The notes under the pieces are model-generated. The model was not told the DNA's origin, did not search any database, and saw nothing but the letters and a program-made list of their open reading frames with translations. The position numbers and the translations under genes were made by a program. This document shows, piece after piece, positions 1 to 10,762 of a stretch of DNA of 10,762 nt; position 1 is the stretch's first letter, and each line of letters starts with the position of its first letter. Location: positions 1 through 10,762 of the IMG/VR virus record IMGVR_UViG_3300005977_000052; one strand, given 5' to 3'.

Positions 1-510
1 CATACCTGGGACTATTCCGTGGATTTCCTCGAAGCCAAGAAAGTCCTCATTAACGCATACAAACAGCTGTTTGATCTAAACTTGATGCCCTACGAGGCGT
101 ACGTTGCCATCCTCCTCATACAACTAACCAACGGATCCAGAATCAAAGAAGCGATAAGGGCGTTTAAGACGTTCGTAGAGTCAGGGCAAAGAGAGTTCCA
201 GTTAGAGGCTGAGAAGCACGGTAACACAAGGGTCTTCATTATTCATGAGGTTATCAGGAACAGGCTAGCGTATAAATCGATACTGACAATCTCTGACGAC
301 AAACTAGAAGCCAGAATAAGGATGTTTGCACTGAAGTACCTGAAATGTAACACACATTCTCTTCGTTATGCACTAATCTCCTTCCTTGCAAAAAACGGCA
401 CAGACCCTGCAATCATCGCGAAGATAACGGGACACAGAGATTACAGATATATTGTAGGGTACACACAGACAAAAGACGCCATCGATATTTTGCGTAAGCT
501 TTCTTCCTAG
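1..510 (+). CDS. Tyrosine recombinase/integrase, catalytic domain; possibly 5'-truncated by the window edge
   Basis: Complete R-K-HxxR-H-Y catalytic set in the 163-aa ORF: GSR(41)IKEA, K66, H113SLR116, TGH139, Y148. Frame 1 is open from base 1 (HTWDYS-VDFLE), so the GTG at 19 may not be the real start. Confidence 0.92.
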   Translation, partial: HTWDYSVDFLEAKKVLINAYKQLFDLNLMPYEAYVAILLIQLTNGSRIKEAIRAFKTFVESGQREFQLEAEKHGNTRVFIIHEVIRNRLAYKSILTISDDKLEARIRMFALKYLKCNTHSLRYALISFLAKNGTDPAIIAKITGHRDYRYIVGYTQTKDAIDILRKLSS

Positions 511-565
511 CTATCTTGACTACTTTTTTAAGCATATAATTCATATTATATAATCAGGTGAAAAG

Positions 566-778
566 ATGGTGGAACTAAAGTTACGCTGGAGGATTAAGAC
601 AACTAAGAAAAACGGTAAAATATATCCAATATACTATATAAGCGTCCCAGGACGTTCAGCTATATTTCTGTTGGATTATGAGCCATACCTAGACCCAGTA
701 AACAAGGTAATCGTTTTTAAACCTAAACAGACTAGCACCCAACAGAACAGTACCCAAGACCAACCCCAAAGTCAATAA
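566..778 (+). CDS. Small putative DNA-binding protein, AbrB/SpoVT-like swapped-hairpin regulator
   Basis: Pattern RIKTTKKNGKIYPIYYISVP...KVIVFKP resembles the AbrB beta-hairpin (basic turn, YxIxIP, C-terminal IVxKP strand). Low-complexity Q/S/T tail. TATA-like TTTTTAAG near 525-532 and RBS AGGTG at 556-560. Confidence 0.55.
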   Translation: MVELKLRWRIKTTKKNGKIYPIYYISVPGRSAIFLLDYEPYLDPVNKVIVFKPKQTSTQQNSTQDQPQSQ

Positions 779-806
779 TTCTTTTCTTTTTCCCTTCTCT
801 CTTTTT

Positions 807-822
807 AACAGCTGTTTTAAGA
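807..822. repeat. Palindromic motif copy AACAGCTGTT-TTAAGA
   Basis: Seen directly; follows the T-rich terminator of the 566-778 gene. Confidence 0.9.
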
Positions 823-836
823 TGCTCTGCTCGTAG

Positions 837-871
837 TTCCCGTCTAACTTGTTGTGCAGAAATTTTAAATA
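837..871 (+). promoter_or_regulatory. Operator-like palindrome plus BRE/TATA promoter, copy 1
   Basis: TTCCCGTCTAAC-TT-GTTGTGCAGAAA (837-862), then TTTAAATA (864-871), 24 nt before ATG 895 (leaderless geometry). Confidence 0.85.
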
Positions 872-894
872 CCAGTCCTAACAATAGTTAAACA

Positions 895-1086
895 ATGACG
901 CCCCAGGAAGAAATAATAAAGGAAATCATAAATATGTTAGAAAAGGACTTCAGCCAGTTGCAGAAAATCGTCTATGAGATTATTAATACGAAAAATAATT
1001 TGGACAGGAAGAAGCTAGGAGAAGCATATTTTATCACACAGAAAATCGATATGGAACTATATAGATTAATTCTCTCTGTTACCTAA
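895..1086 (+). CDS. Hypothetical 63-aa helical protein; paralogue of the C-terminal domain of ORF 1611-2048
   Basis: Has its own promoter and terminator. Shares LE..L..VYEI...DR.K..EAYF..Q.I...L with the 145-aa protein. Confidence 0.85.
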   Translation: MTPQEEIIKEIINMLEKDFSQLQKIVYEIINTKNNLDRKKLGEAYFITQKIDMELYRLILSVT

Positions 1087-1103
1087 AAGCCAACCCGTTT
1101 TTT
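1087..1103 (+). terminator. Conserved oligo-T terminator AAGCCAACCCGTTTTTT
   Basis: Directly after the stop codon. Identical copy at 2047-2063 and a variant at 1423-1442. Archaeal terminators are oligo-T tracts. Confidence 0.75.
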
Positions 1104-1118
1104 ATTCACTTATTCTGC

Positions 1119-1132
1119 AAAACAGCTGTTTT
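1119..1132. repeat. Perfect 14-bp palindrome AAAACAGCTGTTTT
   Basis: Seen directly. Confidence 0.95.
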
Positions 1133-1161
1133 AGAGTTTCATTGGATGCCAAGCCCGTTAG

Positions 1162-1196
1162 TTTCAGCCTAACAAGTTGGACAGAAAACTTAAATA
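1162..1196 (+). promoter_or_regulatory. Operator-like palindrome plus BRE/TATA promoter, copy 2
   Basis: TTTCAGCCTAAC-AA-GTTGGACAGAAA (1162-1187), then CTTAAATA (1189-1196). The downstream TAAATACCAGTC is shared with copy 1. Confidence 0.88.
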
Positions 1197-1229
1197 CCAG
1201 TCTTAACACAATAGTAATGAGGAGGAAAA

Positions 1230-1418
1230 ATGATAGTAGAAGTTAAGAAAAAAGAAGATATAGTACAATTTTTAATTAATTCAAACGACACAGTAGAAAT
1301 TCCTATGAAAGAATTTTTGCAATGTATTAAGATTAAAAAAGAACTAGGTTATGGCTCTTCTGCAGAAAGAGAAGCGATTTTCAATTATATTTTATATAAA
1401 AAGTGTACCTTAACATAG
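1230..1418 (+). CDS. Hypothetical 62-aa protein
   Basis: Strong RBS GAGGAGG just upstream, own promoter, and terminator at 1423-1442. Confidence 0.8.
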   Translation: MIVEVKKKEDIVQFLINSNDTVEIPMKEFLQCIKIKKELGYGSSAEREAIFNYILYKKCTLT

Positions 1419-1422
1419 ACAC

Positions 1423-1442
1423 AAACCAATCCGTTTTTTTTT
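1423..1442 (+). terminator. Terminator variant AAACCAATCCGTTTTTTTTT
   Basis: Variant of the 1087/2047 terminator, 4 nt after the stop codon. Confidence 0.7.
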
Positions 1443-1457
1443 ATCCTTTCTCCTAAC

Positions 1458-1469
1458 AAACAGCTGTTT
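1458..1469. repeat. Palindrome AAACAGCTGTTT
   Basis: Seen directly; followed by TAAAGA. Confidence 0.95.
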
Positions 1470-1544
1470 TAAAGATGTGTTCGTCGTACCCAGCCCTCGA
1501 CCTGCTCCTTGTTTTGTGAGGCAAGGTCTGTCGTTCGTTCGCCA

Positions 1545-1579
1545 TTTCAGCCTAACTAGTTAGACAGAAACTTTATATA
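1545..1579 (+). promoter_or_regulatory. Operator-like palindrome plus BRE/TATA promoter, copy 3 (most symmetric)
   Basis: TTTCAGCCTAAC-TA-GTTAGACAGAAA (1545-1570) with perfect core CTAACTAGTTAG, then TTTATATA (1572-1579). Confidence 0.9.
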
Positions 1580-1610
1580 TCATGAAAGCAAAATGTATAC
1601 TGGGTAAAAT

Positions 1611-2048
1611 ATGGCAAAGTTAAGTAGGAGGGAATTCCAGAAAATGAAAAAGAGAGCAATAGTACAACTCAGGCATCTTGTGCTAGGGTATTATATTGGA
1701 ACGTTTACTGACGAGAACTGTATTAGGATGAACATGGGTTACGATCAAATCGAAGTTATAAATGTTCCTCAGGTACCGTTTCGTACTAAAAATGGGAATC
1801 TTGTTGTAATCGAAGCTAGAATAGTAGTTACCGGAAACGGAAGTGATAGCATCAACATTTGTGCTGGTGATGTGGAGTTTTTAGAAAATTACATAAACGT
1901 CTTAAAGGAACTTGTTTATGAGATCCAAAGATCGATGCGTGTTCCTAGTTCATTTGATAGAGAGAAAATAAAAGAAGCATATTTCGCTGTGCAAAATATT
2001 CAGAGGTATCTGGAAAAGTTATACCCGTTCGCCGAGGCTGATTCATAA
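1611..2048 (+). CDS. Hypothetical 145-aa two-domain protein (basic N-terminal/beta region plus helical C-terminal domain shared with ORF 895-1086)
   Basis: Own promoter and terminator; internal paralogy with the 63-aa ORF. Confidence 0.88.
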   Translation: MAKLSRREFQKMKKRAIVQLRHLVLGYYIGTFTDENCIRMNMGYDQIEVINVPQVPFRTKNGNLVVIEARIVVTGNGSDSINICAGDVEFLENYINVLKELVYEIQRSMRVPSSFDREKIKEAYFAVQNIQRYLEKLYPFAEADS

Positions 2049-2065
2049 GCCAACCCGTTTTTTTT
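2047..2065 (+). terminator. Conserved oligo-T terminator AAGCCAACCCGTTTTTTTT
   Basis: 17 nt identical to 1087-1103; overlaps the stop codon. Confidence 0.75.
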
Positions 2066-2134
2066 GTTTCCTATTTCTCTCAAGCAGTTGTTAAGACCCC
2101 TTTCTTCTCTCCTTCCACACCTACCTCCCAACAA

Positions 2135-2169
2135 ACTTCTCCTAACTCGTTATGTAGAAAACTTATATA
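2135..2169 (+). promoter_or_regulatory. Operator-like palindrome plus BRE/TATA promoter, copy 4
   Basis: ACTTCTCCTAAC-TC-GTTATGTAGAAA (2135-2160), then CTTATATA (2162-2169). A degenerate AGCAGTTGTTAAGA motif lies upstream at 2083-2096. Confidence 0.82.
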
Positions 2170-2201
2170 GCTGAGTTAGCACACATATATAATGACCAAA
2201 T

Positions 2202-2762
2202 ATGTCCTCTCCACATCCACAGGTTAAATCAAATCCTAAGTCAGATCAAACTACTAATTCTACTCTAACGTGGGAGGAGATCTTACGGGCTACAAGAATA
2301 GATAAACAGCATATAGATTTTGCAATAGCTCATATCGATACTGCACCAGATATGCCGTATGAATTCATTTACAGCAAATATATCCCTTCGGATTTCAAAG
2401 TCTTCCATCCCACTAGTGTTGCGGTTAGCGGGGCAGGAGGAGTGATAGGGTCTATTTTAGCTTTAAGACATGCCAGAGCAGTTAAGTACTTTGTAACAAC
2501 CCAAGAAGTACTGAATTCCAACGACAAATCTCCATTATTTCTAGCGAAGTATGCTTTAGAATTATTAGAGAAAAAATACAGAGATGTAGAAATAATTACA
2601 ATAGACCTTGGTGAGTTCGAGAAAATAAAGATACTGTTAAGTTATGGCGGGATATATATATCAGGGTTGCCTAATGAGATTATCGTTGAGATTGCCCAAT
2701 TAGCGGGTTTTGGAAGATTATGGCATTACTCGCCTATTCATCGAAAGTTCTACGTGTTCTAA
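2202..2762 (+). CDS. Hypothetical protein, possibly a degenerate DnaC/IstB-like P-loop fold
   Basis: Order of motifs VAVSGAGGVIGS (Walker A-like, no Lys), YFVTTQEVL and KYRDVEIITIDLG (Walker B-like) resembles DnaC/IstB by eye only. The CDS is solid; the fold call is weak. Confidence 0.5.
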   Translation: MSSPHPQVKSNPKSDQTTNSTLTWEEILRATRIDKQHIDFAIAHIDTAPDMPYEFIYSKYIPSDFKVFHPTSVAVSGAGGVIGSILALRHARAVKYFVTTQEVLNSNDKSPLFLAKYALELLEKKYRDVEIITIDLGEFEKIKILLSYGGIYISGLPNEIIVEIAQLAGFGRLWHYSPIHRKFYVF

Positions 2763-2779
2763 ATTTCGAGGTGACAACA

Positions 2780-3523
2780 GTGAACGAACAACAGTTTGAG
2801 CCAGAAATAAAAAAATTCAAATGGTTATTGAATAGGGGTTACATTACTCCTAAGGAGCTGGAGTTTTACAGCAACTTTTATCAAATCGAAACGACAACAA
2901 TAGTGAATTTTAAAGGGCATGATGTACTAACTCCGTTGTTTATACTAGCAAAACCCAGCCAATTTAATGACATAAAAAAAGAATTACCCCAAGCAGAAAT
3001 AGCAGACCCGATTTCAAGAAAGTTCCCTGTGGTTTCCTTACTAAGTCTAGAAAAGTTTATCAATTCCCTTGTAAATCTGAAAATACCCTACTTGTTCTTC
3101 TCATTATTCTTACATAATTCGTATAATCCTCCACAACAAGTTCACATACTTTTGTCCGCTTTAATTGAACTAGCAAACATTTCAAATAGACACATCATTA
3201 AACCTTACAACATAAAAATAAAACCTTTGCCGTTAGAAGAGCCTATTCCAGTAAGTAATCAACTGTACAAAATCATTTGCCATTACAAGAAAATGCTAGG
3301 TGAGAGAGTTGAGTGTGACGAGGGAGAATGGTGGAAATATAATCTCTGGGGAAAGGATACTATCAGTACCAGTACAGTTGACAGAAAAGTGATAGAGAAA
3401 TTAGCAGTACAATATAACATATCGCCCATATGTGTTCATTACATAATATATTATAACAAAAACATATGCGGACTTTCGACTGATATCATAAATAAAATAA
3501 AATCCCATCTCTCTTCTTCTTAA
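2780..3523 (+). CDS. Hypothetical protein, possible inactive HhH-GPD/AGOG-like C-terminal fold
   Basis: Preferred start is the in-frame GTG 2780 with RBS GAGGTGA at 2768-2774, which avoids overlap with the upstream gene. Contains PIPVSNQL and EKLAVQYNISPICVHYIIY segments. T-tract follows the stop. Confidence 0.5.
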   Translation: MNEQQFEPEIKKFKWLLNRGYITPKELEFYSNFYQIETTTIVNFKGHDVLTPLFILAKPSQFNDIKKELPQAEIADPISRKFPVVSLLSLEKFINSLVNLKIPYLFFSLFLHNSYNPPQQVHILLSALIELANISNRHIIKPYNIKIKPLPLEEPIPVSNQLYKIICHYKKMLGERVECDEGEWWKYNLWGKDTISTSTVDRKVIEKLAVQYNISPICVHYIIYYNKNICGLSTDIINKIKSHLSSS

Positions 3524-3533
3524 TTTTTTCCCT

Positions 3534-4055
3534 CTACATAGTATTCGTATTCTCCTTTCTCTCTCTTTTTGCTATCTTTTTTGCATCTATCACTTCTACT
3601 ACCCCTTCTTCTTCCAGATATTCTAGCACTGCGTCACTATCATCTATCACTATCGCCTTATCTTGGTCATATTTTTCCATTAGCTCCTTTACAACGATTC
3701 TCTTAAATTCATGATCTTTCCTGAAGTCCTTCTCGCCCCTTAGCACGACCTCGTTCGGCTCTATCCCTATCTCTGACAGTTGTTTGAGAGTAACTTCACG
3801 CTGTTTTTCTGAACGACCGCTGACTATGACGATAACTTCTGGCTTTTCCTCCTCAATTAATCGTTTGACAAACTTGATAACTTCCCACTTAGGTTCGTCC
3901 AAGTTCATGAACCTCGGTGATTGATAACATTCCCAAAACACACGGTCGGGTTTCCAAGATAATGTTTTCTTGTCTCCTCTGGATATCTTCTCGCATTCGT
4001 TCCACCTGGCAGAAGTGTCGAAAAGCGTGCCATCCATATCCAAGACCAGCATCAT
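3534..4055 (-). CDS. HAD-superfamily phosphatase, polynucleotide kinase 3'-phosphatase (PNKP C-terminal)-like
   Basis: Motif I LVLDMDGTL, motif II IVSGR, motif III RKDHEFK, motif IV VIDDS; the LRGEKDFRKD segment is typical of this subfamily. Confidence 0.9.
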   Translation of the reverse strand: MMLVLDMDGTLFDTSARWNECEKISRGDKKTLSWKPDRVFWECYQSPRFMNLDEPKWEVIKFVKRLIEEEKPEVIVIVSGRSEKQREVTLKQLSEIGIEPNEVVLRGEKDFRKDHEFKRIVVKELMEKYDQDKAIVIDDSDAVLEYLEEEGVVEVIDAKKIAKRERKENTNTM

Positions 4056-4630
4056 TTTGCTCCACTCCCTGGTTCCTTAAAACCTAGTATTGTTATTTTC
4101 CCGTTCTCTTCTTTGAACTCTAACTCCTTAGCTTCTCCCTCGACACTGTACACAAAGTAAAACGTTTTGAGACCCTTACCGTCTCTTTCCCACTCCAGTT
4201 TACTACATTTCCCATCAAATCTACTATGGAAGTAGTCTATCGCCTCTTGGTCGTTCTGTTCTTTTGCTATTTTTTCTAACGTTGCAGGGTCAAACGGTTG
4301 ATAGAATAAGTAGACCTTCTTATTGCCTTTTCCATCATCAAAAAAGAAGTATATTCCGTATTTGAACAGGTTAAGGTTTGACGTCGTTATTATTTCACGG
4401 TGTTTCATGATATATTCGTTGTCCGCAACGGCAGAAATATAAAGTGTATCATGTCCGTCACCTATGCCTATACATAGCAGGTTTGTGTGTACGATTTTGT
4501 CGTTTTTGATCCTGTCCATTCTCACATAGAAAGAGATATACGCTACACCTATGACAGGTTTAGCCTGGGGCATGAACCCTTCCACACGCACTATGAAGTA
4601 TTTGTCTATATCGACTTTCGAGTTTACCAT
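4052..4630 (-). CDS. Hypothetical beta-rich protein (about 192 aa), co-transcribed with the HAD gene
   Basis: Preferred start is ATG 4630, 23 nt after a minus-strand TATA TTTTTAAA (4653-4660). Its stop overlaps the HAD start (ATGA, 4052-4055). Confidence 0.8.
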   Translation of the reverse strand: MVNSKVDIDKYFIVRVEGFMPQAKPVIGVAYISFYVRMDRIKNDKIVHTNLLCIGIGDGHDTLYISAVADNEYIMKHREIITTSNLNLFKYGIYFFFDDGKGNKKVYLFYQPFDPATLEKIAKEQNDQEAIDYFHSRFDGKCSKLEWERDGKGLKTFYFVYSVEGEAKELEFKEENGKITILGFKEPGSGAK

Positions 4631-4672
4631 GTTAGATTCTTCGCATGATAGCTTTAAAAAGCAGACTGACAA

Positions 4673-4715
4673 AATGAACGGTAAGCCTCGACCTTTAGGG
4701 TGGGGAGGAGGTTAG
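4673..4715 (+). mobile_element. IS200/IS605-type right-end hairpin remnant
   Basis: AAGCCTCGACCTTTAGGGTGGGGAGGAGGTTAG resembles the Sulfolobales IS605/tnpB right end as I recall it (CCTCGCCCTTTAGGGCGGGGAGGAAGTCAG). Similar copy at 8882-8922. Confidence 0.7.
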
Positions 4716-4720
4716 TTTTC

Positions 4721-4736
4721 AAACATCTGTTTAAGA
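4721..4736. repeat. Palindrome variant AAACATCTGTTT-AAGA
   Basis: One mismatch to the consensus; lies between divergent promoters. Confidence 0.8.
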
Positions 4737-4786
4737 GCAAATCCCTTCTGGTTGGTTTTTAAACCTTTTCTGTGGAAAGTAAAGAT

Positions 4787-6616: not shown

Positions 6617-7273
6617 ATGGCATATAATAAAAAACAAAACGAAGTCCCTACTCCTGAACAATTCCAGTTCATTGTCTATAAAGAGGTATGCATGGGGGAC
6701 AAAAGCCTTGTACATCCTACTTTGGCTATAGAGAGGCTGAACACTGTAATGCTTACCTATTACACCGACGAGATAGAAGAGTTATGGAGGGAATTAGTCC
6801 TAAAAAGATATGAGAATGCGACATCTGAGGACGAACTAAGGCAGATACTAAAGATCGGTTGCGATATAATGTTTATCGTAATGAACGCGTCTGGCGAGGA
6901 CGTTAAGTCGTTAGTAACGAAAATACTGAACAGCACAAGGAAAAAACATCTGTTTTATGTTAACGAAGAAGGACTAGTTGCTGAAAGCTCGTATCTTATA
7001 GACGTGCTGACAAGGTTTGTGAACCCCAACGGGTTCGACGTGTTGACTGTCCTAAGCATACTAAAGGACGTGCAAATTAGGACGGCTACTATGATTAGCA
7101 GTATTAAGGGGACGTCGCTGTATCAGTCGCTTGTAAGTGAACTAGGAATAGATGAAAATGTCATTGAGAAAAAATGCACGGCGAAGTACTATAGGGAATG
7201 CGTAACTGAGAAGAAAACACAATTGCTGAAAGCGTTGCAGTTTATCAGGATGAATATAAATATTCCGCGTTAA
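6617..7273 (+). CDS. Hypothetical helical protein, 218 aa
   Basis: RBS GAGGTGG upstream; last gene of the operon. Confidence 0.8.
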   Translation: MAYNKKQNEVPTPEQFQFIVYKEVCMGDKSLVHPTLAIERLNTVMLTYYTDEIEELWRELVLKRYENATSEDELRQILKIGCDIMFIVMNASGEDVKSLVTKILNSTRKKHLFYVNEEGLVAESSYLIDVLTRFVNPNGFDVLTVLSILKDVQIRTATMISSIKGTSLYQSLVSELGIDENVIEKKCTAKYYRECVTEKKTQLLKALQFIRMNINIPR

Positions 7274-7336
7274 AGCTACAAGGATTTTCCAGTTCTAAAA
7301 GAGATCTGTACTCTTGGGCGAAAGATAAAATAATTT

Positions 7337-7353
7337 AAACAGCTGTTTTAAGA
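7337..7353. repeat. Palindrome AAACAGCTGTTT-TAAGA
   Basis: Seen directly. Confidence 0.95.
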
Positions 7354-7393
7354 CCTTATCCTTCGCTCCGTCGCCGTCCACCAATCACCTTGT

Positions 7394-7430
7394 TTACTGC
7401 CTAATTGGTTGAGGAAGAGAGTTTTAAATA
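7394..7430 (+). promoter_or_regulatory. Degenerate operator-like palindrome plus TATA, copy 5
   Basis: TTACTGCCTAAT-TG-GTTGAGGAAGAG (7394-7419), then TTTAAATA (7423-7430). Spacing is 1-2 nt longer than in copies 1-4. Confidence 0.6.
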
Positions 7431-7461
7431 TCGGTTTGGCATAAAAATATACTGACCTAAA

Positions 7462-8850
7462 ATGAGGATAGATATTCCAAAAAGTGACGGTACTACAATT
7501 TCGCTGTATCCATTAGATGAATATCTCTCTCATGTCCTTTTTGATCACTTCGTTTTAACTGGAGACTTTGTACGTCACGAAGAATTGTCAGACGAATATA
7601 ACGGATCATTGAAATTAGTTGACTATAAGCCTATGGCAACATTTAGTCCCGAGAATTCGCAAGGATATATGCCATTTATAATTAAAATGAGTACTTCACC
7701 CGAGGAATACTACAGTCTCGGATACCCAAAGGGAATAGTGCATTGTGGAGAAAAAACCATATACCTCAAATTAGGTGAGCTTAGCAGGAAAATCAAAAAA
7801 GTATACGATTACACAATTAGTAAGAGGATTGTCCATGTTAAAATAATACGAGGTAGTACAACTAAAGATTTTGATTTTGATGTGGTCATATTAAAGGACG
7901 GGTACTCTGCTGATCCGCGTTTCAAAGATGAGCGTATATCAGCTAAGAAAAAAATAAAAGAATTAATTCAAATGTTAGAATCTGAGATTCCTACAATCCG
8001 AGAAGATTTCAGGATCGAATATAATTTTTACACTTATCCAGATAATCCACTCCTATACCCACACATTTTACTCATCCCTAAATTGGTTATAAAGGAAATT
8101 TCCGATTTCTTATTATCTGAGTACGAACAAACTTATGGCATTGTTACAAAACTACCAGCAGAATTTGTACCTAATGAAAATGTTCATAGTCCTGAGTTGC
8201 TGAAATTCCTTAATAAGATACCATTTGAACTTTTTACCAAAGCGGTTATAGGCTTGTATGCCTCTCATCCTGCTGTACTATTACCCGAAGGTGACTATTC
8301 ACAATATCTCACGGGCAATGAGCGTGTGGTCAATATCAACCTAGCGAAAAACGTTGTCGTTGTAATAGTTTTTGGTAATTCTCAGGAACAACAAAACGTA
8401 GAGCAGAATAAGGAGGAAGAAAATAGAAATACTGAGGAAAATAAAGTAGAAAAAGTACCTAATAATGTTGTCGAAGGATTAGGTAAGGAAATCCAGTCTA
8501 TTTATGAATCAATAATTCAAGACGATTCAATAAACGTTGAGAAAAAGAAACATCGACTTAAGACACTGAACGAAGCCTTAGACGAACTAGGCAAAGCAAT
8601 ATTGGATGCATTAAAAAGTCAAACCCCGCTGAACGCTAATGAGCTAAGAAAATATACAGAAGATATAGTTAAAAGTGCTGGACTGTTATATACTAATAAT
8701 TTTAAGTATTACCTCAGTTATTATGAACGTTCTTTAAACGAAACTGCAGAGCTTGAAGTACTAGCTACACTTTTGGATTCTATTGGGAAAACAATGTATG
8801 ATATAGATAAAAAAATAAAAGAATATAATTCGCTACAATTAACATATTAA
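7462..8850 (+). CDS. Hypothetical 462-aa protein: globular N-terminus, E/N/K-rich linker, helical or coiled-coil C-terminus
   Basis: Longest ORF, with its own promoter. Linker QEQQNVEQNKEEENRNTEENKVEK. No family recognised. Confidence 0.85.
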   Translation: MRIDIPKSDGTTISLYPLDEYLSHVLFDHFVLTGDFVRHEELSDEYNGSLKLVDYKPMATFSPENSQGYMPFIIKMSTSPEEYYSLGYPKGIVHCGEKTIYLKLGELSRKIKKVYDYTISKRIVHVKIIRGSTTKDFDFDVVILKDGYSADPRFKDERISAKKKIKELIQMLESEIPTIREDFRIEYNFYTYPDNPLLYPHILLIPKLVIKEISDFLLSEYEQTYGIVTKLPAEFVPNENVHSPELLKFLNKIPFELFTKAVIGLYASHPAVLLPEGDYSQYLTGNERVVNINLAKNVVVVIVFGNSQEQQNVEQNKEEENRNTEENKVEKVPNNVVEGLGKEIQSIYESIIQDDSINVEKKKHRLKTLNEALDELGKAILDALKSQTPLNANELRKYTEDIVKSAGLLYTNNFKYYLSYYERSLNETAELEVLATLLDSIGKTMYDIDKKIKEYNSLQLTY

Positions 8851-8881: not shown

Positions 8882-8922
8882 GGGAGTGGAAAGCCTCGCC
8901 TTCAAGGTGGGGAGGAAGTCAG
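8882..8922 (+). mobile_element. Minimal IS200/IS605-type hairpin element
   Basis: GTTAA|GGGAGTGGAAAGCCTCGCCTTCAAGGTGGGGAGGAAGTCAG: stem CCTCGCC/GGTGGGG ending in GGAAGTCAG; lies between convergent genes. Confidence 0.75.
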
Positions 8923-8935
8923 CTTAAAAAAGAAT

Positions 8936-9184
8936 TTATCTTATATTGTATTTGTTTAGTTTTTTGGATAGTTCGTCCAAAAGACGTTTATCCATCAGTA
9001 AAATGTCTGTAATGTCATCAATATATTCGTTCACTATGTCTTCTAGATCAGTACGATCAAACTCCACATCATCAACGTCAACGTCAACATAATCTTTGAA
9101 GTCGTTGCATATGATCCCTTCTTGCTTATCGCAATCACAATTGTCCTCTAATCTACTATATTTTATGAACACTGGTACTTTCAT
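8936..9184 (-). CDS. Small highly acidic hypothetical protein, 82 aa
   Basis: 23 D/E in 82 aa by hand count. Own promoter TTTATATA (9217-9224, minus strand) and GTGAG RBS-like sequence. Confidence 0.85.
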   Translation of the reverse strand: MKVPVFIKYSRLEDNCDCDKQEGIICNDFKDYVDVDVDDVEFDRTDLEDIVNEYIDDITDILLMDKRLLDELSKKLNKYNIR

Positions 9185-9211
9185 TTAGCTCACACTATAA
9201 TACTATCAAAA

Positions 9212-9241
9212 ACTGGTATATAAACCTCAAACAGCTGTTTG
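9212..9241 (-). promoter_or_regulatory. Promoter with palindrome CAAACAGCTGTTTG next to the BRE/TATA
   Basis: Minus strand reads CAAACAGCTGTTTG-AGG-TTTATATA-CCAGT. The TATA-CCAGT context matches promoter copies 1 and 2. Confidence 0.8.
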
Positions 9242-9259
9242 TGAGAGCGGAATACGGGT

Positions 9260-9295
9260 CTGATCCCCCTGGGAGGGTGAGGTTTCCCGCTCATT
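9260..9295 (-). mobile_element. Possible third, decayed IS605-type end remnant
   Basis: Minus strand AATGAGCGGGAAACCTCACCCTCCCAGGGGGATCAG aligns loosely with AATGAACGGTAAGCCTCGACC...GTTAG at 4673-4715. Confidence 0.4.
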
Positions 9296-9959
9296 AACTT
9301 CCATTTAAAACTACGGAAAATATCGTAGTGTTTTGTGCATATATAACTAGAGTATTATCACATATGTACGATTTTACTTCTCCACCATCATGTGCCACTA
9401 TTATGCTTCCATTTATTGGGTAGTATAATGTCTGTTCTATCAGTGCTGTTCCATTTATTGTGATTTTTCCTTTTTGCACTGTTATATGCCCGTTATATAG
9501 TATCTGCCAGCCGTATTCCGATACACCATACGATGAGTTGTATATTACAGTAAAACTAGGATTTACGATAGGATATACCGTACCTGCAGGAGCGAATCCG
9601 CTTATAGATAAGACAGCAGTTTGAGTACTGTACAGGTAGAATGTAATTACATAGGGAGAGTTTTGTGAAATGGCAATAGTAGGATCTGGTGCCGTAACGT
9701 TTACTATAACATATTCGTGCGGTTTTAGGATTATTATGTTTTGGTACCAACGATGACTGTTAATTACCGGCACCAATACATATGTTTTATTGGTAGGGTT
9801 TTGTATGCATATCGTTAGCACGTTGTACTTATTTATTTCTCCTACGTCGTAGAAATCCAGTACCTTTGCATGCAATTGTGGTTGATAGAAAAAAATAGAA
9901 AACGTGAAAAGGGATGGTATTATAACTACTAACATTAGTATGATTTCAAACTTTTGCAT
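9294..9959 (-). CDS. Membrane-anchored extracellular beta-rich protein
   Basis: N-terminal TM/signal segment; many N-glycosylation sequons (NKT, NVT, NSS, NGT, NGS, NTT); 14-nt overlap with the upstream GT-C-like gene. Confidence 0.8.
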   Translation of the reverse strand: MQKFEIILMLVVIIPSLFTFSIFFYQPQLHAKVLDFYDVGEINKYNVLTICIQNPTNKTYVLVPVINSHRWYQNIIILKPHEYVIVNVTAPDPTIAISQNSPYVITFYLYSTQTAVLSISGFAPAGTVYPIVNPSFTVIYNSSYGVSEYGWQILYNGHITVQKGKITINGTALIEQTLYYPINGSIIVAHDGGEVKSYICDNTLVIYAQNTTIFSVVLNGS

Positions 9960-10762
9960 CTTTCATCATCCATACTGCATATTGTAATGCAAAATAAAAT
10001 GTAAAATATCCCAAATCTCTAAAAGAGAATATCCATATTAACGCCGGAAGACCCCAAGCTAATTCTTTCTTATTATTATATAGTAGGATTAATGCAAAAA
10101 GAGACACCTCAAGTACGGTATACACGAATGAGGGGATAGGTAAGCCGAACGCAGTAAGGAGTGAAAACGAAACGCCCTGCTGTGCAACAGGTTGTGTAAT
10201 AGTTATAACGGACGCAAGGTATTGCTTTGAAATGAAGGGTATTGATGAGAGCAGTAGCGGTAACGCGAATTCTATTATCTTTCTAAGTTTCTGTCTTTCA
10301 AATTTAATTAGAAGAATAGCTATCAGTATCGCAAACTGTTTTACGTCTGCAGAGATTCCTAGGAGCAGGTATCTGAATCTCTCATTAAGTAGGGCAAGAA
10401 ACGCAATAGAATATGCAAAAAGGTTCAGTTCTTGCCCTGTCGCAAAATCATATGAAAGTGCGGGAAATAGGAAAAAAGATGCGATGAAAGCGTTTTCGTG
10501 TCTTTTGAGGAAGGAATACGTGAAAGCTAAAACAGCTGTTATTACGTTTACTGTTTCAAGGTTATGCAAAACCGCAACGCTGATGAACGATAATGGGGGG
10601 TAAATATAGACGGTCGGCAGAAATGAGTTTGACGTAGTGCCGGTAACAACGTTATACGGAACGTGATATATGAAAAATGCTTTAGTCATTGAGTAAAGGT
10701 ACGGGTTTTTTCCGTCGAGGAATAAGTGTGACGCGTATAATATTGTTGCTTCTTCATCCGTG
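9946..10762 (-). CDS. Multi-pass membrane protein, GT-C fold glycosyltransferase-like (GT87/DUF2029-type); 5'-truncated
   Basis: Frame stays open beyond ATG 10689 to the window end and reads TDEEATILYASHLFLDGKNPYLYS-MTK. The TDE, G.NPY and Y.YPPL motifs, a later VKQF and multiple TM helices are typical of GT-C enzymes. Confidence 0.65.
   Translation of the reverse strand, partial: TDEEATILYASHLFLDGKNPYLYSMTKAFFIYHVPYNVVTGTTSNSFLPTVYIYPPLSFISVAVLHNLETVNVITAVLAFTYSFLKRHENAFIASFFLFPALSYDFATGQELNLFAYSIAFLALLNERFRYLLLGISADVKQFAILIAILLIKFERQKLRKIIEFALPLLLSSIPFISKQYLASVITITQPVAQQGVSFSLLTAFGLPIPSFVYTVLEVSLFALILLYNNKKELAWGLPALIWIFSFRDLGYFTFYFALQYAVWMMKDAKV

What the first reader, a model, noticed from the sequence alone, without database searches (positions are those of the whole stretch)
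1..2201. Cassette-like gene array with a conserved three-part spacer immediately downstream of a tyrosine recombinase
Seen: four consecutive intergenic regions (779-894, 1087-1229, 1419-1610, 2049-2201) have the same order: T-tract terminator, AAACAGCTGTTT(T)AAGA (degenerate in the fourth), a variable pyrimidine/GC-rich spacer, a 26-bp palindrome, TATA, then a gene. All are on the recombinase strand, and the cargo is mostly unrelated small orphan ORFs. Established: conserved intergenic units around variable single genes mark gene-capture or shuffling platforms (integrons, recombination motifs in pNOB8-type Sulfolobus plasmids). Shared promoters also mark early anti-defence genes in Sulfolobales viruses. 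Inference: a modular platform in which self-contained promoter-gene-terminator units are gained or swapped, by the adjacent recombinase or by homologous recombination between spacers.
Basis: partly seen in the sequence, partly recalled or inferred. Interest (0 to 1): 0.85.

Follow-up and report, generated by a model that had tools for sequence, protein, structure and literature searches.

The report
Swappable gene units in archaeal virus
A Sulfolobus tailed-spindle virus carries a row of small genes, each with its own standard promoter and terminator, and related viruses have lost, duplicated or swapped whole units at these shared sequences, most likely by ordinary recombination and not through the neighbouring integrase.

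Summary
The window is a whole metagenomic contig of an SMV3/SMV4-like Sulfolobus monocaudavirus. Four intergenic units (779-894, 1087-1229, 1419-1610, 2049-2201) each hold a T-tract, motif A (AACAGCTGTT, core of a roughly 20-bp palindrome), a spacer, motif B (CTAAC-N2-GTT next to BRE/TATA) and a gene.

The layout is not tied to the integrase. A fifth unit lies at 7274-7461. Motif A is genome-wide (20 exact copies in SMV3, 16 of them intergenic; 17 in SMV1). Motif B promoters also occur 10-15 kb from the SMV3 integrase.

Motif B appears to be the published SMV3/SMV4 'early/anti-defence gene' regulatory sequence (PMC11065993). That paper lists the homologues of these genes.

About 40 relatives carry different sets of units before the same structural gene. 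Sequence left of motif A follows the upstream gene and sequence right of it follows the downstream gene. Two contigs 99.85% identical on both sides differ by exactly one unit, with the crossover inside a 22-nt identical block that contains motif A. Other junctions lie at motif B/TATA, and one lies left of the palindrome centre.

Best reading: shared regulatory sequences serve as short-homology crossover points. An integron-like, integrase-driven mechanism is not supported, but it is not excluded.

The parts
1..510 (+). C-terminal part of a tyrosine-recombinase (integrase) gene, cut by the contig end
   Evidence: Pfam Phage_integrase E=1.5e-6, 28.6 bits against a cut-off of 27.1. Homologous to SMV3 gp50 and SMV4 gp44/45, both annotated integrase.
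59..74 (.). Motif A copy inside the integrase ORF (16-bp perfect palindrome ACAAACAGCTGTTTGA with its partner at 9227-9242)
   Evidence: (I7). The 10-mer AAACAGCTGT, which overlaps motif A by nine bases, is invariant in 11 relatives; the full motif A 10-mer is intact in 10 of the 11 and has one change in L004. This cannot be separated from coding constraint.
566..778 (+). Conserved 70-aa ORF (phrog_18276, function unknown). It precedes the array and has no three-part spacer upstream.
   Evidence: AF2 model has pLDDT 72 with a beta-beta-beta-alpha-beta-beta order and no significant PDB fold match.
779..894 (+). Unit 1 intergenic: T-rich terminator 779-806, motif A 807-816, spacer, motif B 844-862, TATA 863-871
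895..1086 (+). Cargo 1: 63-aa SSV1 D-63-like protein ('D63s'), homologue of SMV3 gp48
   Evidence: Pfam PF20940 E=5.5e-18. SMV3 gp48 is listed as 'ADa' in PMC11065993 Suppl. Data 1.
1087..1229 (+). Unit 2 intergenic: T-tract, motif A 1121-1130, motif B 1169-1187, TATA 1189-1196
1230..1418 (+). Cargo 2: 62-aa ORF ('C4'), weak phrog_15325 match. Found in only some relatives.
1419..1610 (+). Unit 3 intergenic: T-tract, motif A 1459-1468, long spacer, motif B 1552-1570 (best palindrome), TATA 1572-1579
1611..2048 (+). Cargo 3: 145-aa ORF with a C-terminal D-63 domain ('D63L'), homologue of SMV4 gp40
   Evidence: Pfam PF20940 E=1.2e-6 at residues 90-138.. SMV4 gp40 is ADG.72 in PMC11065993.
2049..2201 (+). 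Unit 4 intergenic: T-tract, degenerate motif A 2083-2092, pyrimidine-rich spacer, motif B 2142-2160, TATA 2162-2169
2202..2762 (+). 186-aa homologue of SMV3 gp46 ('virion structural protein'). It is the conserved right-hand anchor of the array.
   Evidence: phrog_17386 E=1.2e-80..
4719..4735 (.). Motif A-like site (one mismatch) in the divergent intergenic region 4673-4771. It marks the right junction of the 3.9-kb block that SMV1 lacks.
7274..7461 (+). Fifth three-part unit: motif A 7338-7347, spacer, motif B-like 7401-7419, TATA 7422-7430
7462..8850 (+). 462-aa variable ORF behind unit 5. Absent at this site from L004, SMV3 and SMV4.
9185..9293 (-). Intergenic region with motif A 9230-9239, 5 nt from the TATA box of the minus-strand gene 8936-9184. 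A mosaic boundary against L013, L054 and SMV4.
10531..10540 (.). Motif A copy inside the minus-strand membrane-protein ORF 9946-10689
   Evidence: Conserved in SMV3 and SMV4.

Best explanation
The region is a locus of self-contained, single-gene transcription units in an SMV3/SMV4-like monocaudavirus.

Each unit has four parts. (i) A strong archaeal promoter (BRE + TATA) with a dyad site, CTAAC-N2-GTTAG, that abuts and overlaps the BRE (motif B). It appears to be the virus-specific 'early / anti-defence gene' regulatory sequence already published for SMV3 and SMV4, and is presumably an operator for a dimeric regulator. (ii) A small gene starting 23-34 nt after the TATA box. (iii) A T-tract terminator. 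(iv) About 30-40 nt after the stop codon, motif A. This is the core of a palindrome of about 20 bp (TCTCAAACAGCTGTTTGAGA-like) that is scattered through the intergenic regions of the whole genome. At other promoters it lies 4-9 nt from a TATA box or between divergent TATA boxes, so it is most likely a second protein-binding (operator or insulator) site.

These sequences are the only homology shared by otherwise unrelated units. General short-homology recombination can therefore act on them, within one genome and between co-infecting relatives. It deletes, duplicates and exchanges whole units, which gives a hypervariable locus anchored by conserved flanking genes. The integrase is not needed.

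Shown: the anatomy, the genome-wide distribution, the variable content and the junction positions. Inferred: that proteins bind A and B, early timing, any anti-defence role of the cargo, and the recombination pathway.
For: Anatomy and excess over chance.

Motif A is genome-wide and intergenic. SMV3 has 20 exact copies, 16 of them intergenic in a genome that is 86% coding, and motif A (up to 1 mismatch) is present in 23 of 59 intergenic regions longer than 40 nt. SMV1 has 17 exact copies. At divergent promoters it lies between the two TATA boxes.

Motif B promoters in SMV3 precede gp03, gp16, gp46-48, gp62, gp63, gp68, gp69 and gp71. Of these, gp46, gp47, gp48, gp62, gp69, gp71 and SMV4 gp40 are listed as ADG/ADa from a shared regulatory sequence in PMC11065993.

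Variable content: seven cargo families occur in at least 10 different architectures before the same anchor gene, across SMV3, SMV4 and 37 metagenome loci. The order also changes: D63s-C6-C2 in L034 against C6'-D63s-C2 in L042.

Junction mapping:
- The left flank follows the upstream gene and the right flank follows the downstream gene, with the switch between -1 and +15 of motif A.
- 27 of 35 homology ends inside array intergenic units fall in the -30..+40 block, which is 43% of their length (binomial p=4e-5; the ends are not independent).
- L031 and L033 are 99.85% identical on both sides of a one-unit indel, with the crossover inside a 22-nt identical block.
- The window differs from SMV4 at 808/1459, from SMV1 at 805/4711, and from L004 at 1463/2047.

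Evidence for homology-driven and not site-specific exchange:
- L029 and L031 are 100% identical for 688 nt and then about 70% identical from motif B/TATA onward.
- L042:434 and L046:32 join an SP-type spacer to another unit's motif B.
- Both mutated positions of the degenerate motif A travel with the right flank behind three different left flanks, and the L004 crossover maps 5-10 nt left of the motif.

Independent samples repeat the same architectures with diverged sequence, which argues against assembly chimeras. Recombination between short repeats in Sulfolobus, and between dispersed motifs in Sulfolobales plasmids and virus HAV1, is established (PMC4390879).
Against: No binding protein for either motif was identified. 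The conserved 70-aa neighbour gave no informative fold.

Four of the 20 SMV3 motif A copies, and window copies 62 and 10531, lie inside ORFs. That is more than chance predicts and a promoter-operator role does not explain it.

The insertion of the reversed 321-aa gene in SMV4/L039-type genomes abuts motif A on one side only, with no flanking homology on the left. Simple repeat-to-repeat recombination does not account for this.

No transcript data exist for this virus group, so early timing, monocistronic transcripts and termination are all inferred. One gene under a motif B promoter is annotated as a virion structural protein, which fits poorly with an early or anti-defence class.
Confidence: 0.6

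Rival explanations
1. Integron-like platform. The adjacent tyrosine recombinase (or another viral recombinase) recognises the motif A palindrome as a core site (7-bp arms around CAGCTG) and excises or inserts units site-specifically.
For: Junctions are concentrated at motif A. Several junctions lie exactly at its left edge with unrelated left flanks (L048 against L040; the 70-aa, reversed-gene and generic left flanks before the same D63 unit). Motif A has a recombinase-core-like dyad shape. A copy lies inside the integrase ORF and is conserved in 10 of 11 relatives, which recalls SSV-type integrases that carry attP inside the gene (own knowledge).
Against: Units carry their own promoters. The same units occur 10-15 kb from the integrase, and motif A occurs at 23 of 59 SMV3 intergenic regions. 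Junctions are also found at motif B/TATA and left of the palindrome centre, and both halves of the degenerate motif travel with one flank. No cargo homologue was found at an ectopic site in SMV1 or SMV3. The spacers show no attC-like folding. A perfectly symmetrical centre gives no directionality.
Confidence: 0.08
2. Motif A is mainly a recombination hot spot. For example, the palindrome stalls forks or extrudes a cruciform, or is cut by a nuclease, so that breaks there stimulate homologous exchange. Any regulatory role is secondary.
For: A-block junctions outnumber B-block junctions even though both blocks are similarly conserved. There are copies inside ORFs. Mosaic boundaries at motif A lie outside the array, at 4711-4722 and 9193-9273. 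The one-sided insertion of the reversed gene lies exactly at the motif edge.
Against: The placement 4-9 nt from TATA boxes and between divergent promoters is typical of an operator. A 10-20-bp palindrome is short for cruciform extrusion. The conserved block around A (about 40-60 nt including the terminator) is longer than the B block, which alone could explain the bias. The mapped L004 crossover is beside the motif and not in it.
Confidence: 0.15
3. The region is only a co-regulated gene cluster. Differences among relatives come from ordinary indels and divergence, and the motifs play no part in rearrangement.
For: Motif B is a published regulatory consensus. Most observed architectures could in principle come from differential loss out of one longer ancestral array.
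Against: Whole-unit indels lie in 99.85%-identical backgrounds with the crossover inside the shared block. The flank-linkage switch at motif A is sharp. Homology ends are enriched in the A block even against an intergenic-only null. The unit order changes between L034 and L042. Paralogous units (D63s/D63L, C2a/C2b) indicate unequal exchange.
Confidence: 0.1
4. The apparent shuffling is an artefact of metagenome assembly switching between strains at the repeated intergenic blocks.
For: Most relatives are short metagenomic contigs, and repeats of 22-38 nt are present.
Against: The same architectures recur in independent samples with diverged sequences: window and L057; L004 and L058; L032 and L037; SMV3, L039 and L042. 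The cultured isolate SMV1 also differs at motif A junctions. The identical blocks are shorter than the largest k-mers usually used in assembly (own knowledge).
Confidence: 0.03

Closest known systems
Virus-specific early / anti-defence gene (ADG) regulatory sequences of Sulfolobales viruses (Bhoobalan-Chitty et al. 2024, PMC11065993)
   Same: Several small, mostly orphan genes in one genome are each preceded by the same strong BRE/TATA promoter plus a conserved flanking sequence. For SMV2 the authors describe inverted repeats overlapping the BRE as a likely repressor site. SMV3 gp46, gp47, gp48 (ADa), gp62, gp69, gp71 and SMV4 gp40 are in their list, and they coincide with the motif B promoters found here independently.
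   Different: The paper does not mention terminators, the motif A palindrome, recombination or unit shuffling. It describes the ADGs of SMV2-4 as located randomly in the genome. The consensus logos are figures and could not be compared base by base. Early expression and anti-defence function are untested for these genes.
Recombination motifs of pNOB8-family Sulfolobus conjugative plasmids and of virus HAV1 (reviewed in PMC4390879)
   Same: A short conserved motif is dispersed round a Sulfolobales mobile element, and genome variants differ by recombination between copies.
   Different: The motif sequence is different. Here the motif sits in a fixed position after terminators and next to promoters and looks regulatory. 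Variants are inferred from comparison of natural relatives and were not seen arising in culture. No enzyme is implicated in either case.
Boundary or linker sequences in mosaic bacteriophage genomes (Susskind-Botstein modular evolution; own knowledge)
   Same: Modules are exchanged between relatives at short conserved sequences located at gene boundaries, with sharp transitions from near-identity to unrelated sequence.
   Different: Here the linkers are repeated in tandem within one locus, so they also allow intragenomic deletion and duplication of single-gene units. The host is an archaeon, and the linkers are archaeal promoter and terminator elements.
Integrons
   Same: An ordered array of single-gene units lies on one strand near a tyrosine recombinase gene, with a conserved palindromic element at the 3' end of each unit and variable cargo.
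   Different: Units have their own promoters. The element is a short perfect palindrome and not a folded attC. The integrase shows only a weak generic Phage_integrase match. The same units occur elsewhere in the genome. Junctions are not confined to one site.
Bacteriophage acr-aca loci (own knowledge)
   Same: Variable small orphan genes accompany one conserved small gene, here the D-63-like protein flagged 'ADa' in PMC11065993. Promoters carry an inverted repeat.
   Different: There is no homology to known Acr or Aca proteins. Each gene has its own promoter and terminator, not one shared operon. D-63 is a four-helix-bundle family whose DNA binding is unproven.

Membership tests
Integron | Cassettes are promoterless and expressed from a common Pc promoter next to attI | tested here: not met
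   Each unit has its own BRE/TATA promoter 23-34 nt before the ATG.
Integron | attC sites: imperfect inverted repeats of about 60-140 nt that fold as single strands at the 3' end of each cassette | tested here: not met
   Spacer folding has z-scores around 0 on both strands. RNAalifold predicts no pairs. Motif A is a short, perfect duplex palindrome of 10-20 bp.
Integron | IntI-type integrase adjacent to the array that catalyses cassette excision and insertion | tested here: inconclusive
   Only a generic Phage_integrase match at threshold and no PDB sequence relative. A 70-aa gene, and in many relatives a reversed 321-aa gene, intervene. Catalysis is not testable here.
Integron | Free circular cassettes | not testable with these tools
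   Needs the reads of the source metagenomes.
ADG / early-gene regulatory-sequence loci of archaeal viruses (PMC11065993) | A predicted strong promoter (BRE+TATA) with a surrounding sequence shared by several genes of the same viral genome | tested here: met
   Motif B + BRE + TATA precedes 4 genes, plus a fifth degenerate copy, in the window. It precedes 10 or more genes in SMV3.
ADG / early-gene regulatory-sequence loci of archaeal viruses (PMC11065993) | Genes or homologues are listed as ADG in the authors' data | tested here: met
   SMV3 gp46/47/48 and SMV4 gp40, the homologues of window 2202-2762, the C2 family, 895-1086 and 1611-2048, are in Suppl. Data 1.
ADG / early-gene regulatory-sequence loci of archaeal viruses (PMC11065993) | Immediate-early transcription and inhibition of a host defence | not testable with these tools
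   No transcriptome or assay exists for this virus. Pfam and PHROG give no functional hint beyond D-63, a sub-threshold C2H2 finger and DUF3258.
Dispersed recombination motifs of Sulfolobales mobile elements (pNOB8 family, HAV1) | A short conserved motif present in many copies round the genome | tested here: met
   20 exact copies in SMV3, 17 in SMV1 and 7 in the 10.8-kb window, against 0.42 expected for up to 1 mismatch.
Dispersed recombination motifs of Sulfolobales mobile elements (pNOB8 family, HAV1) | Genome variants differ by recombination between motif copies | tested here: met
   Junctions map to the motif A block, although some map to motif B/TATA.
Dispersed recombination motifs of Sulfolobales mobile elements (pNOB8 family, HAV1) | Same motif sequence as in the plasmids | not tested
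   The plasmid motif was not retrieved. No searchable paper that mentions Sulfolobus contains AACAGCTGTT.

The most novel reading that the evidence does not exclude
The terminator-linked motif A palindrome is a dedicated recombination site. It would be an archaeal-virus counterpart of attC or dif that is recognised by the SMV integrase (which carries a copy inside its own gene) or by another viral enzyme. In that case these viruses would run an active gene-cassette exchange system whose cassettes bring their own promoters.
Probability: 0.08. Interest if true: 0.85.

Novelty: new variant of a known kind. Interest (0 to 1): 0.55.

Why it matters
If the reading is right, this virus group shows unusually clearly how regulatory sequences double as the joints of modular evolution. 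Whole single-gene units, several of them already predicted to be early or anti-defence genes, are lost, duplicated and traded between co-circulating viruses at two short conserved elements.

This gives three practical gains. First, it gives a rule for finding variable accessory genes in uncultured Sulfolobales viruses: look between motif A and the next terminator. Second, it gives two candidate operator sequences to use as bait for the unknown regulators. Third, it gives a natural system for measuring short-homology recombination in hyperthermophilic archaea.

Motif A and the unit-level junction map were not found in the searchable literature. Motif B and the ADG prediction are already published.

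Tried and rejected
(1) attC-like or RNA structure in the spacers. RNAalifold on 15 long spacers predicted no pairs. Single-sequence folding gave z-scores around 0 on both strands. Rfam gave no hit in the window.

(2) The 70-aa ORF as an AbrB/MazE-like regulator. There was no PDB sequence hit. The AF2 model has pLDDT 72, and the best Foldseek E-value was 0.5, with MazE only at rank 22. The idea is not supported.

(3) attP/tRNA at the integrase. There is no tRNA in the window and the integrase has no PDB relative. Conservation of motif A inside the ORF cannot be separated from coding constraint.

(4) Proviruses or host copies. No relative of the anchor protein and no copy of the 20-mer palindrome were found in 185,579 species genomes.

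(5) Exact-pattern scans of viral contigs with 17-mer and 14-mer versions of motif A gave mostly chance singletons in unrelated contigs and only a few further relatives.

(6) Ectopic copies of the cargo genes in SMV1 and SMV3: none found.

(7) The position-only null for breakpoints (41% observed against 7% expected) overstates the effect, because breakpoints favour intergenic DNA. It was replaced by an intergenic-only null and a flank-linkage profile.

(8) Literature searches for the motif or for promoter or recombination motifs in Bicaudaviridae found nothing specific except PMC11065993.

Full report
**Identity of the window.** The window is the complete contig IMGVR_UViG_3300005977_000052 (= Ga0081474_124958). 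Megablast places it in the Sulfolobus monocaudaviruses. It matches SMV3 at 82% identity over 57% of its length and SMV4 at 84% over 54%. SMV1 matches only from 4711 onward. The gene order is:
- integrase C-terminus (1-510; Pfam Phage_integrase just above threshold)
- a conserved 70-aa ORF (566-778)
- four small ORFs and a 186-aa 'virion structural protein' homologue, all on the + strand
- a second structural-protein homologue
- a HAD/PNK phosphatase and further genes.

**Check of the observation.**
- a T-rich tract
- motif A (AACAGCTGTT; AGCAGTTGTT in the fourth)
- a spacer of 27-83 nt
- motif B (CTAAC-N2-GTT-N3-YAGAAA)
- a TATA box
- an ATG 23-34 nt later.

Both motifs are far above chance. 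Motif A with up to one mismatch gives 10 matches against 0.42 expected. Motif B gives 6 matches against 0.33 expected.

Four details need correction. The 26-bp palindrome is good only in units 2 and 3. Two cargo genes share the SSV1 D-63 domain. A 70-aa gene lies between the integrase and the array. The layout is not confined to 1-2201: a fifth full unit precedes the 462-aa ORF at 7462, and motif A also lies at 62, 9230 and 10531, and with one mismatch at 4722.

**What the two motifs are.** Across about 60 units in relatives, motif A is the centre of a longer dyad, typically tctcaAACAGCTGTTtgaga.

In the complete SMV3 genome there are 20 exact copies. Sixteen are intergenic although 86% of the genome is coding. 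Motif A (up to one mismatch) is present in 23 of 59 intergenic regions longer than 40 nt. SMV1 has 17 exact copies. The 20-mer was found in none of 185,579 bacterial and archaeal species genomes.

Between co-directional genes it follows the upstream stop codon by about 30-40 nt, just after the T-tract. At divergent promoters it lies between the two TATA boxes. At several promoters, including window 9230, it lies 4-9 nt from the TATA box. That placement is typical of an operator. I infer, but have not shown, that a dimeric DNA-binding protein binds it.

Motif B abuts the BRE. In its best copies the dyad extends over the BRE. In SMV3 it precedes gp03, gp16, gp46-48, gp62, gp63 (the aCcr1 homologue of PMC9976878), gp68, gp69 and gp71. 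These genes form further three-part arrays at 49-55 kb, 10-15 kb from the integrase.

Bhoobalan-Chitty et al. 2024 (PMC11065993) derived virus-specific early / anti-defence regulatory sequences for SMV2, SMV3 and SMV4. For SMV2 they describe inverted repeats overlapping the BRE. Their Supplementary Data 1 lists SMV3 gp46, gp47, gp48 ('ADa'), gp62, gp69, gp71 and SMV4 gp40. This set closely matches my motif B set. The promoter part of the finding is therefore already known for the close relatives. That paper does not mention terminators, motif A or recombination, and no searchable paper that mentions Sulfolobus contains the motif.

**Comparison with relatives.** I used the 186-aa anchor protein to collect SMV3, SMV4, one further IMG/VR contig and 37 metagenome loci. 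Every locus with enough upstream sequence shows one to four A+B units before the anchor gene.

The cargo falls into families: short D-63 (D63s), long D-63 (D63L), C2 (SMV3 gp47-like, with a weak C2H2 signal), C4, and the singletons C5, C6 (DUF3258) and C7.

Observed architectures, with SP as the anchor gene:
- D63s-C4-D63L-SP (window, L057)
- D63s-C4-SP (L004, L058)
- D63s-C2-SP (SMV3, L039, L042)
- D63s-C6-C2-SP (L034)
- D63s-C7-SP (L036)
- D63s-D63L-SP (L032, L037)
- D63s-SP (L028, L050-52)
- C2b-D63L-C2a-SP (L031)
- C5-C2b-D63L-SP (L033)
- D63L-SP behind a reversed gene (SMV4).

The order differs between L034 (D63s-C6-C2) and L042 (C6'-D63s-C2). SMV1 lacks everything from 806 to 4710. In SMV4, L039 and others, a reversed gene of about 321 aa lies between the 70-aa gene and the first unit. 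The same architectures recur in independent samples with diverged sequence, so they are not assembly accidents.

**Where the junctions are.** In the table of all units, the sequence left of motif A goes with the upstream gene and the sequence right of it goes with the downstream gene.

A profile over unit pairs makes this quantitative. Pairs with the same upstream but a different downstream context are similar up to about +14 of motif A and at background beyond +15 to +20. Pairs with a different upstream but the same downstream context show the reverse.

Of 35 ends of high-identity alignments that fall inside array intergenic units, 27 lie between -30 and +40 of motif A. That block is 43% of the intergenic-unit length (p=4e-5, with the caveat that the ends are not independent).

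Individual cases are sharper:
- L031 and L033 are 99.85% identical over 663 nt on one side and 1413 nt on the other. They differ by exactly one C2 unit (519 nt, motif A to motif A). The crossover is confined to a 22-nt identical block, ttcttctctcaAACAGCTGTTt.
- L048 and L040 share a 98.9%-identical C2 unit that begins exactly at motif A behind unrelated left flanks.
- Window against SMV4 breaks at 808 and 1459. Window against SMV1 breaks at 805 and 4711. Window against L004 breaks at 1463/2047.

Mosaic boundaries at motif A also occur outside the array, at 9193-9273.

**Homologous or site-specific recombination.** Several observations favour recombination through shared sequence over strand exchange at one site.
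- L029 and L031 are 100% identical for 688 nt, through motif A and the whole spacer. They drop to about 70% from motif B/TATA onward.
- L042:434 and L046:32 join an SP-type spacer to another unit's motif B. The C5 and C7 genes sit behind D63-type promoters.
- In the clade with the degenerate motif A (AGCAGTTGTT), both mutated positions, one in each half of the dyad, travel with the right flank behind three different left flanks. The L004 crossover maps 5-10 nt left of the motif. Exchange in the CAGCTG centre would have separated the two halves.
- The conserved block around motif A, running from the terminator T-tract to about +14, is the longest homology shared by all units. That alone can explain why most junctions lie there.
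- No cargo homologue was found at an ectopic position in SMV1 or SMV3.
- The spacers show no significant folding.

Recombination between short repeats in Sulfolobus, and between dispersed motifs in pNOB8-family plasmids and virus HAV1, is documented (PMC4390879).

Three points remain awkward for a purely passive model. Motif A copies inside ORFs exceed chance. One of them lies in the integrase gene and is conserved in 10 of 11 relatives. The reversed gene is inserted exactly at the motif edge with no homology on its left.

The integron analogy and the role of the adjacent recombinase are not supported. The units are one instance of a genome-wide way of punctuating transcription units. Motif B appears to be a published early / anti-defence regulatory sequence. 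The junction pattern fits short-homology recombination at conserved regulatory blocks.

What appears new is motif A as a terminator-linked, genome-wide palindrome, together with the base-level map showing that it marks the joints of single-gene modules. I rate this a new variant of a known kind and of moderate interest. There is a small residual chance (about 0.08) that motif A is a true recombinase site, which would be much more interesting.

Noticed in passing
window 4684-4716 and 8893-8925; L004 about 6905-6945: A GC-rich element (AAGCCTCG.CCTT.A.GGTGGGGAGGA.G) recurs in two intergenic regions of the window and in a relative. It was reported as direct repeat D13. Its function is unknown; it may be a hairpin at gene ends.
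   Followed up: no
L057:3581-3973 and L058:201-596: The conserved 70-aa ORF family (window 566-778) is tandemly duplicated in two relatives.
   Followed up: partly
window 806-4710 against SMV1 (L176): The cultured virus SMV1 lacks the whole block that holds the array, both 'virion structural protein' homologues, the HAD/PNK phosphatase and a 206-aa ORF. These 'structural' genes are therefore accessory in this virus group.
   Followed up: partly
window 3510-4086: The HAD/PNK phosphatase gene alone is 85.9% nucleotide-identical to Acidianus tailed spindle virus, with no other similarity to that virus. This looks like a gene-sized transfer between virus groups (Pfam).
   Followed up: no
window 7462-8850: The 462-aa ORF combines an N-terminal part of phrog_20664 (similar to the N-terminus of SMV1 gp05, which lies elsewhere in that genome) with a C-terminal part of phrog_16992. 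It is absent at this site from L004, SMV3 and SMV4.
   Followed up: partly
window 807-816 against 844-853, and the other units: Motif A reads AAC-N4-GTT and the motif B core reads AAC-N2-GTT. These are the same half-sites at different spacing, which could mean related binding proteins.
   Followed up: no
L002 (SMV4) 2778-3507: The SMV4 integrase is annotated as two ORFs, and the gap between them (3020-3082) holds the internal motif A copy at 3059. The record has N runs nearby, so this may be a sequencing problem.
   Followed up: no
SMV3 record 49565-49837 (L060): The SMV3 aCcr1 homologue gp63, shown by others to block host cell division (PMC9976878), lies behind a motif B promoter with motif A upstream. 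It therefore belongs to the same promoter class as the array genes.
   Followed up: partly
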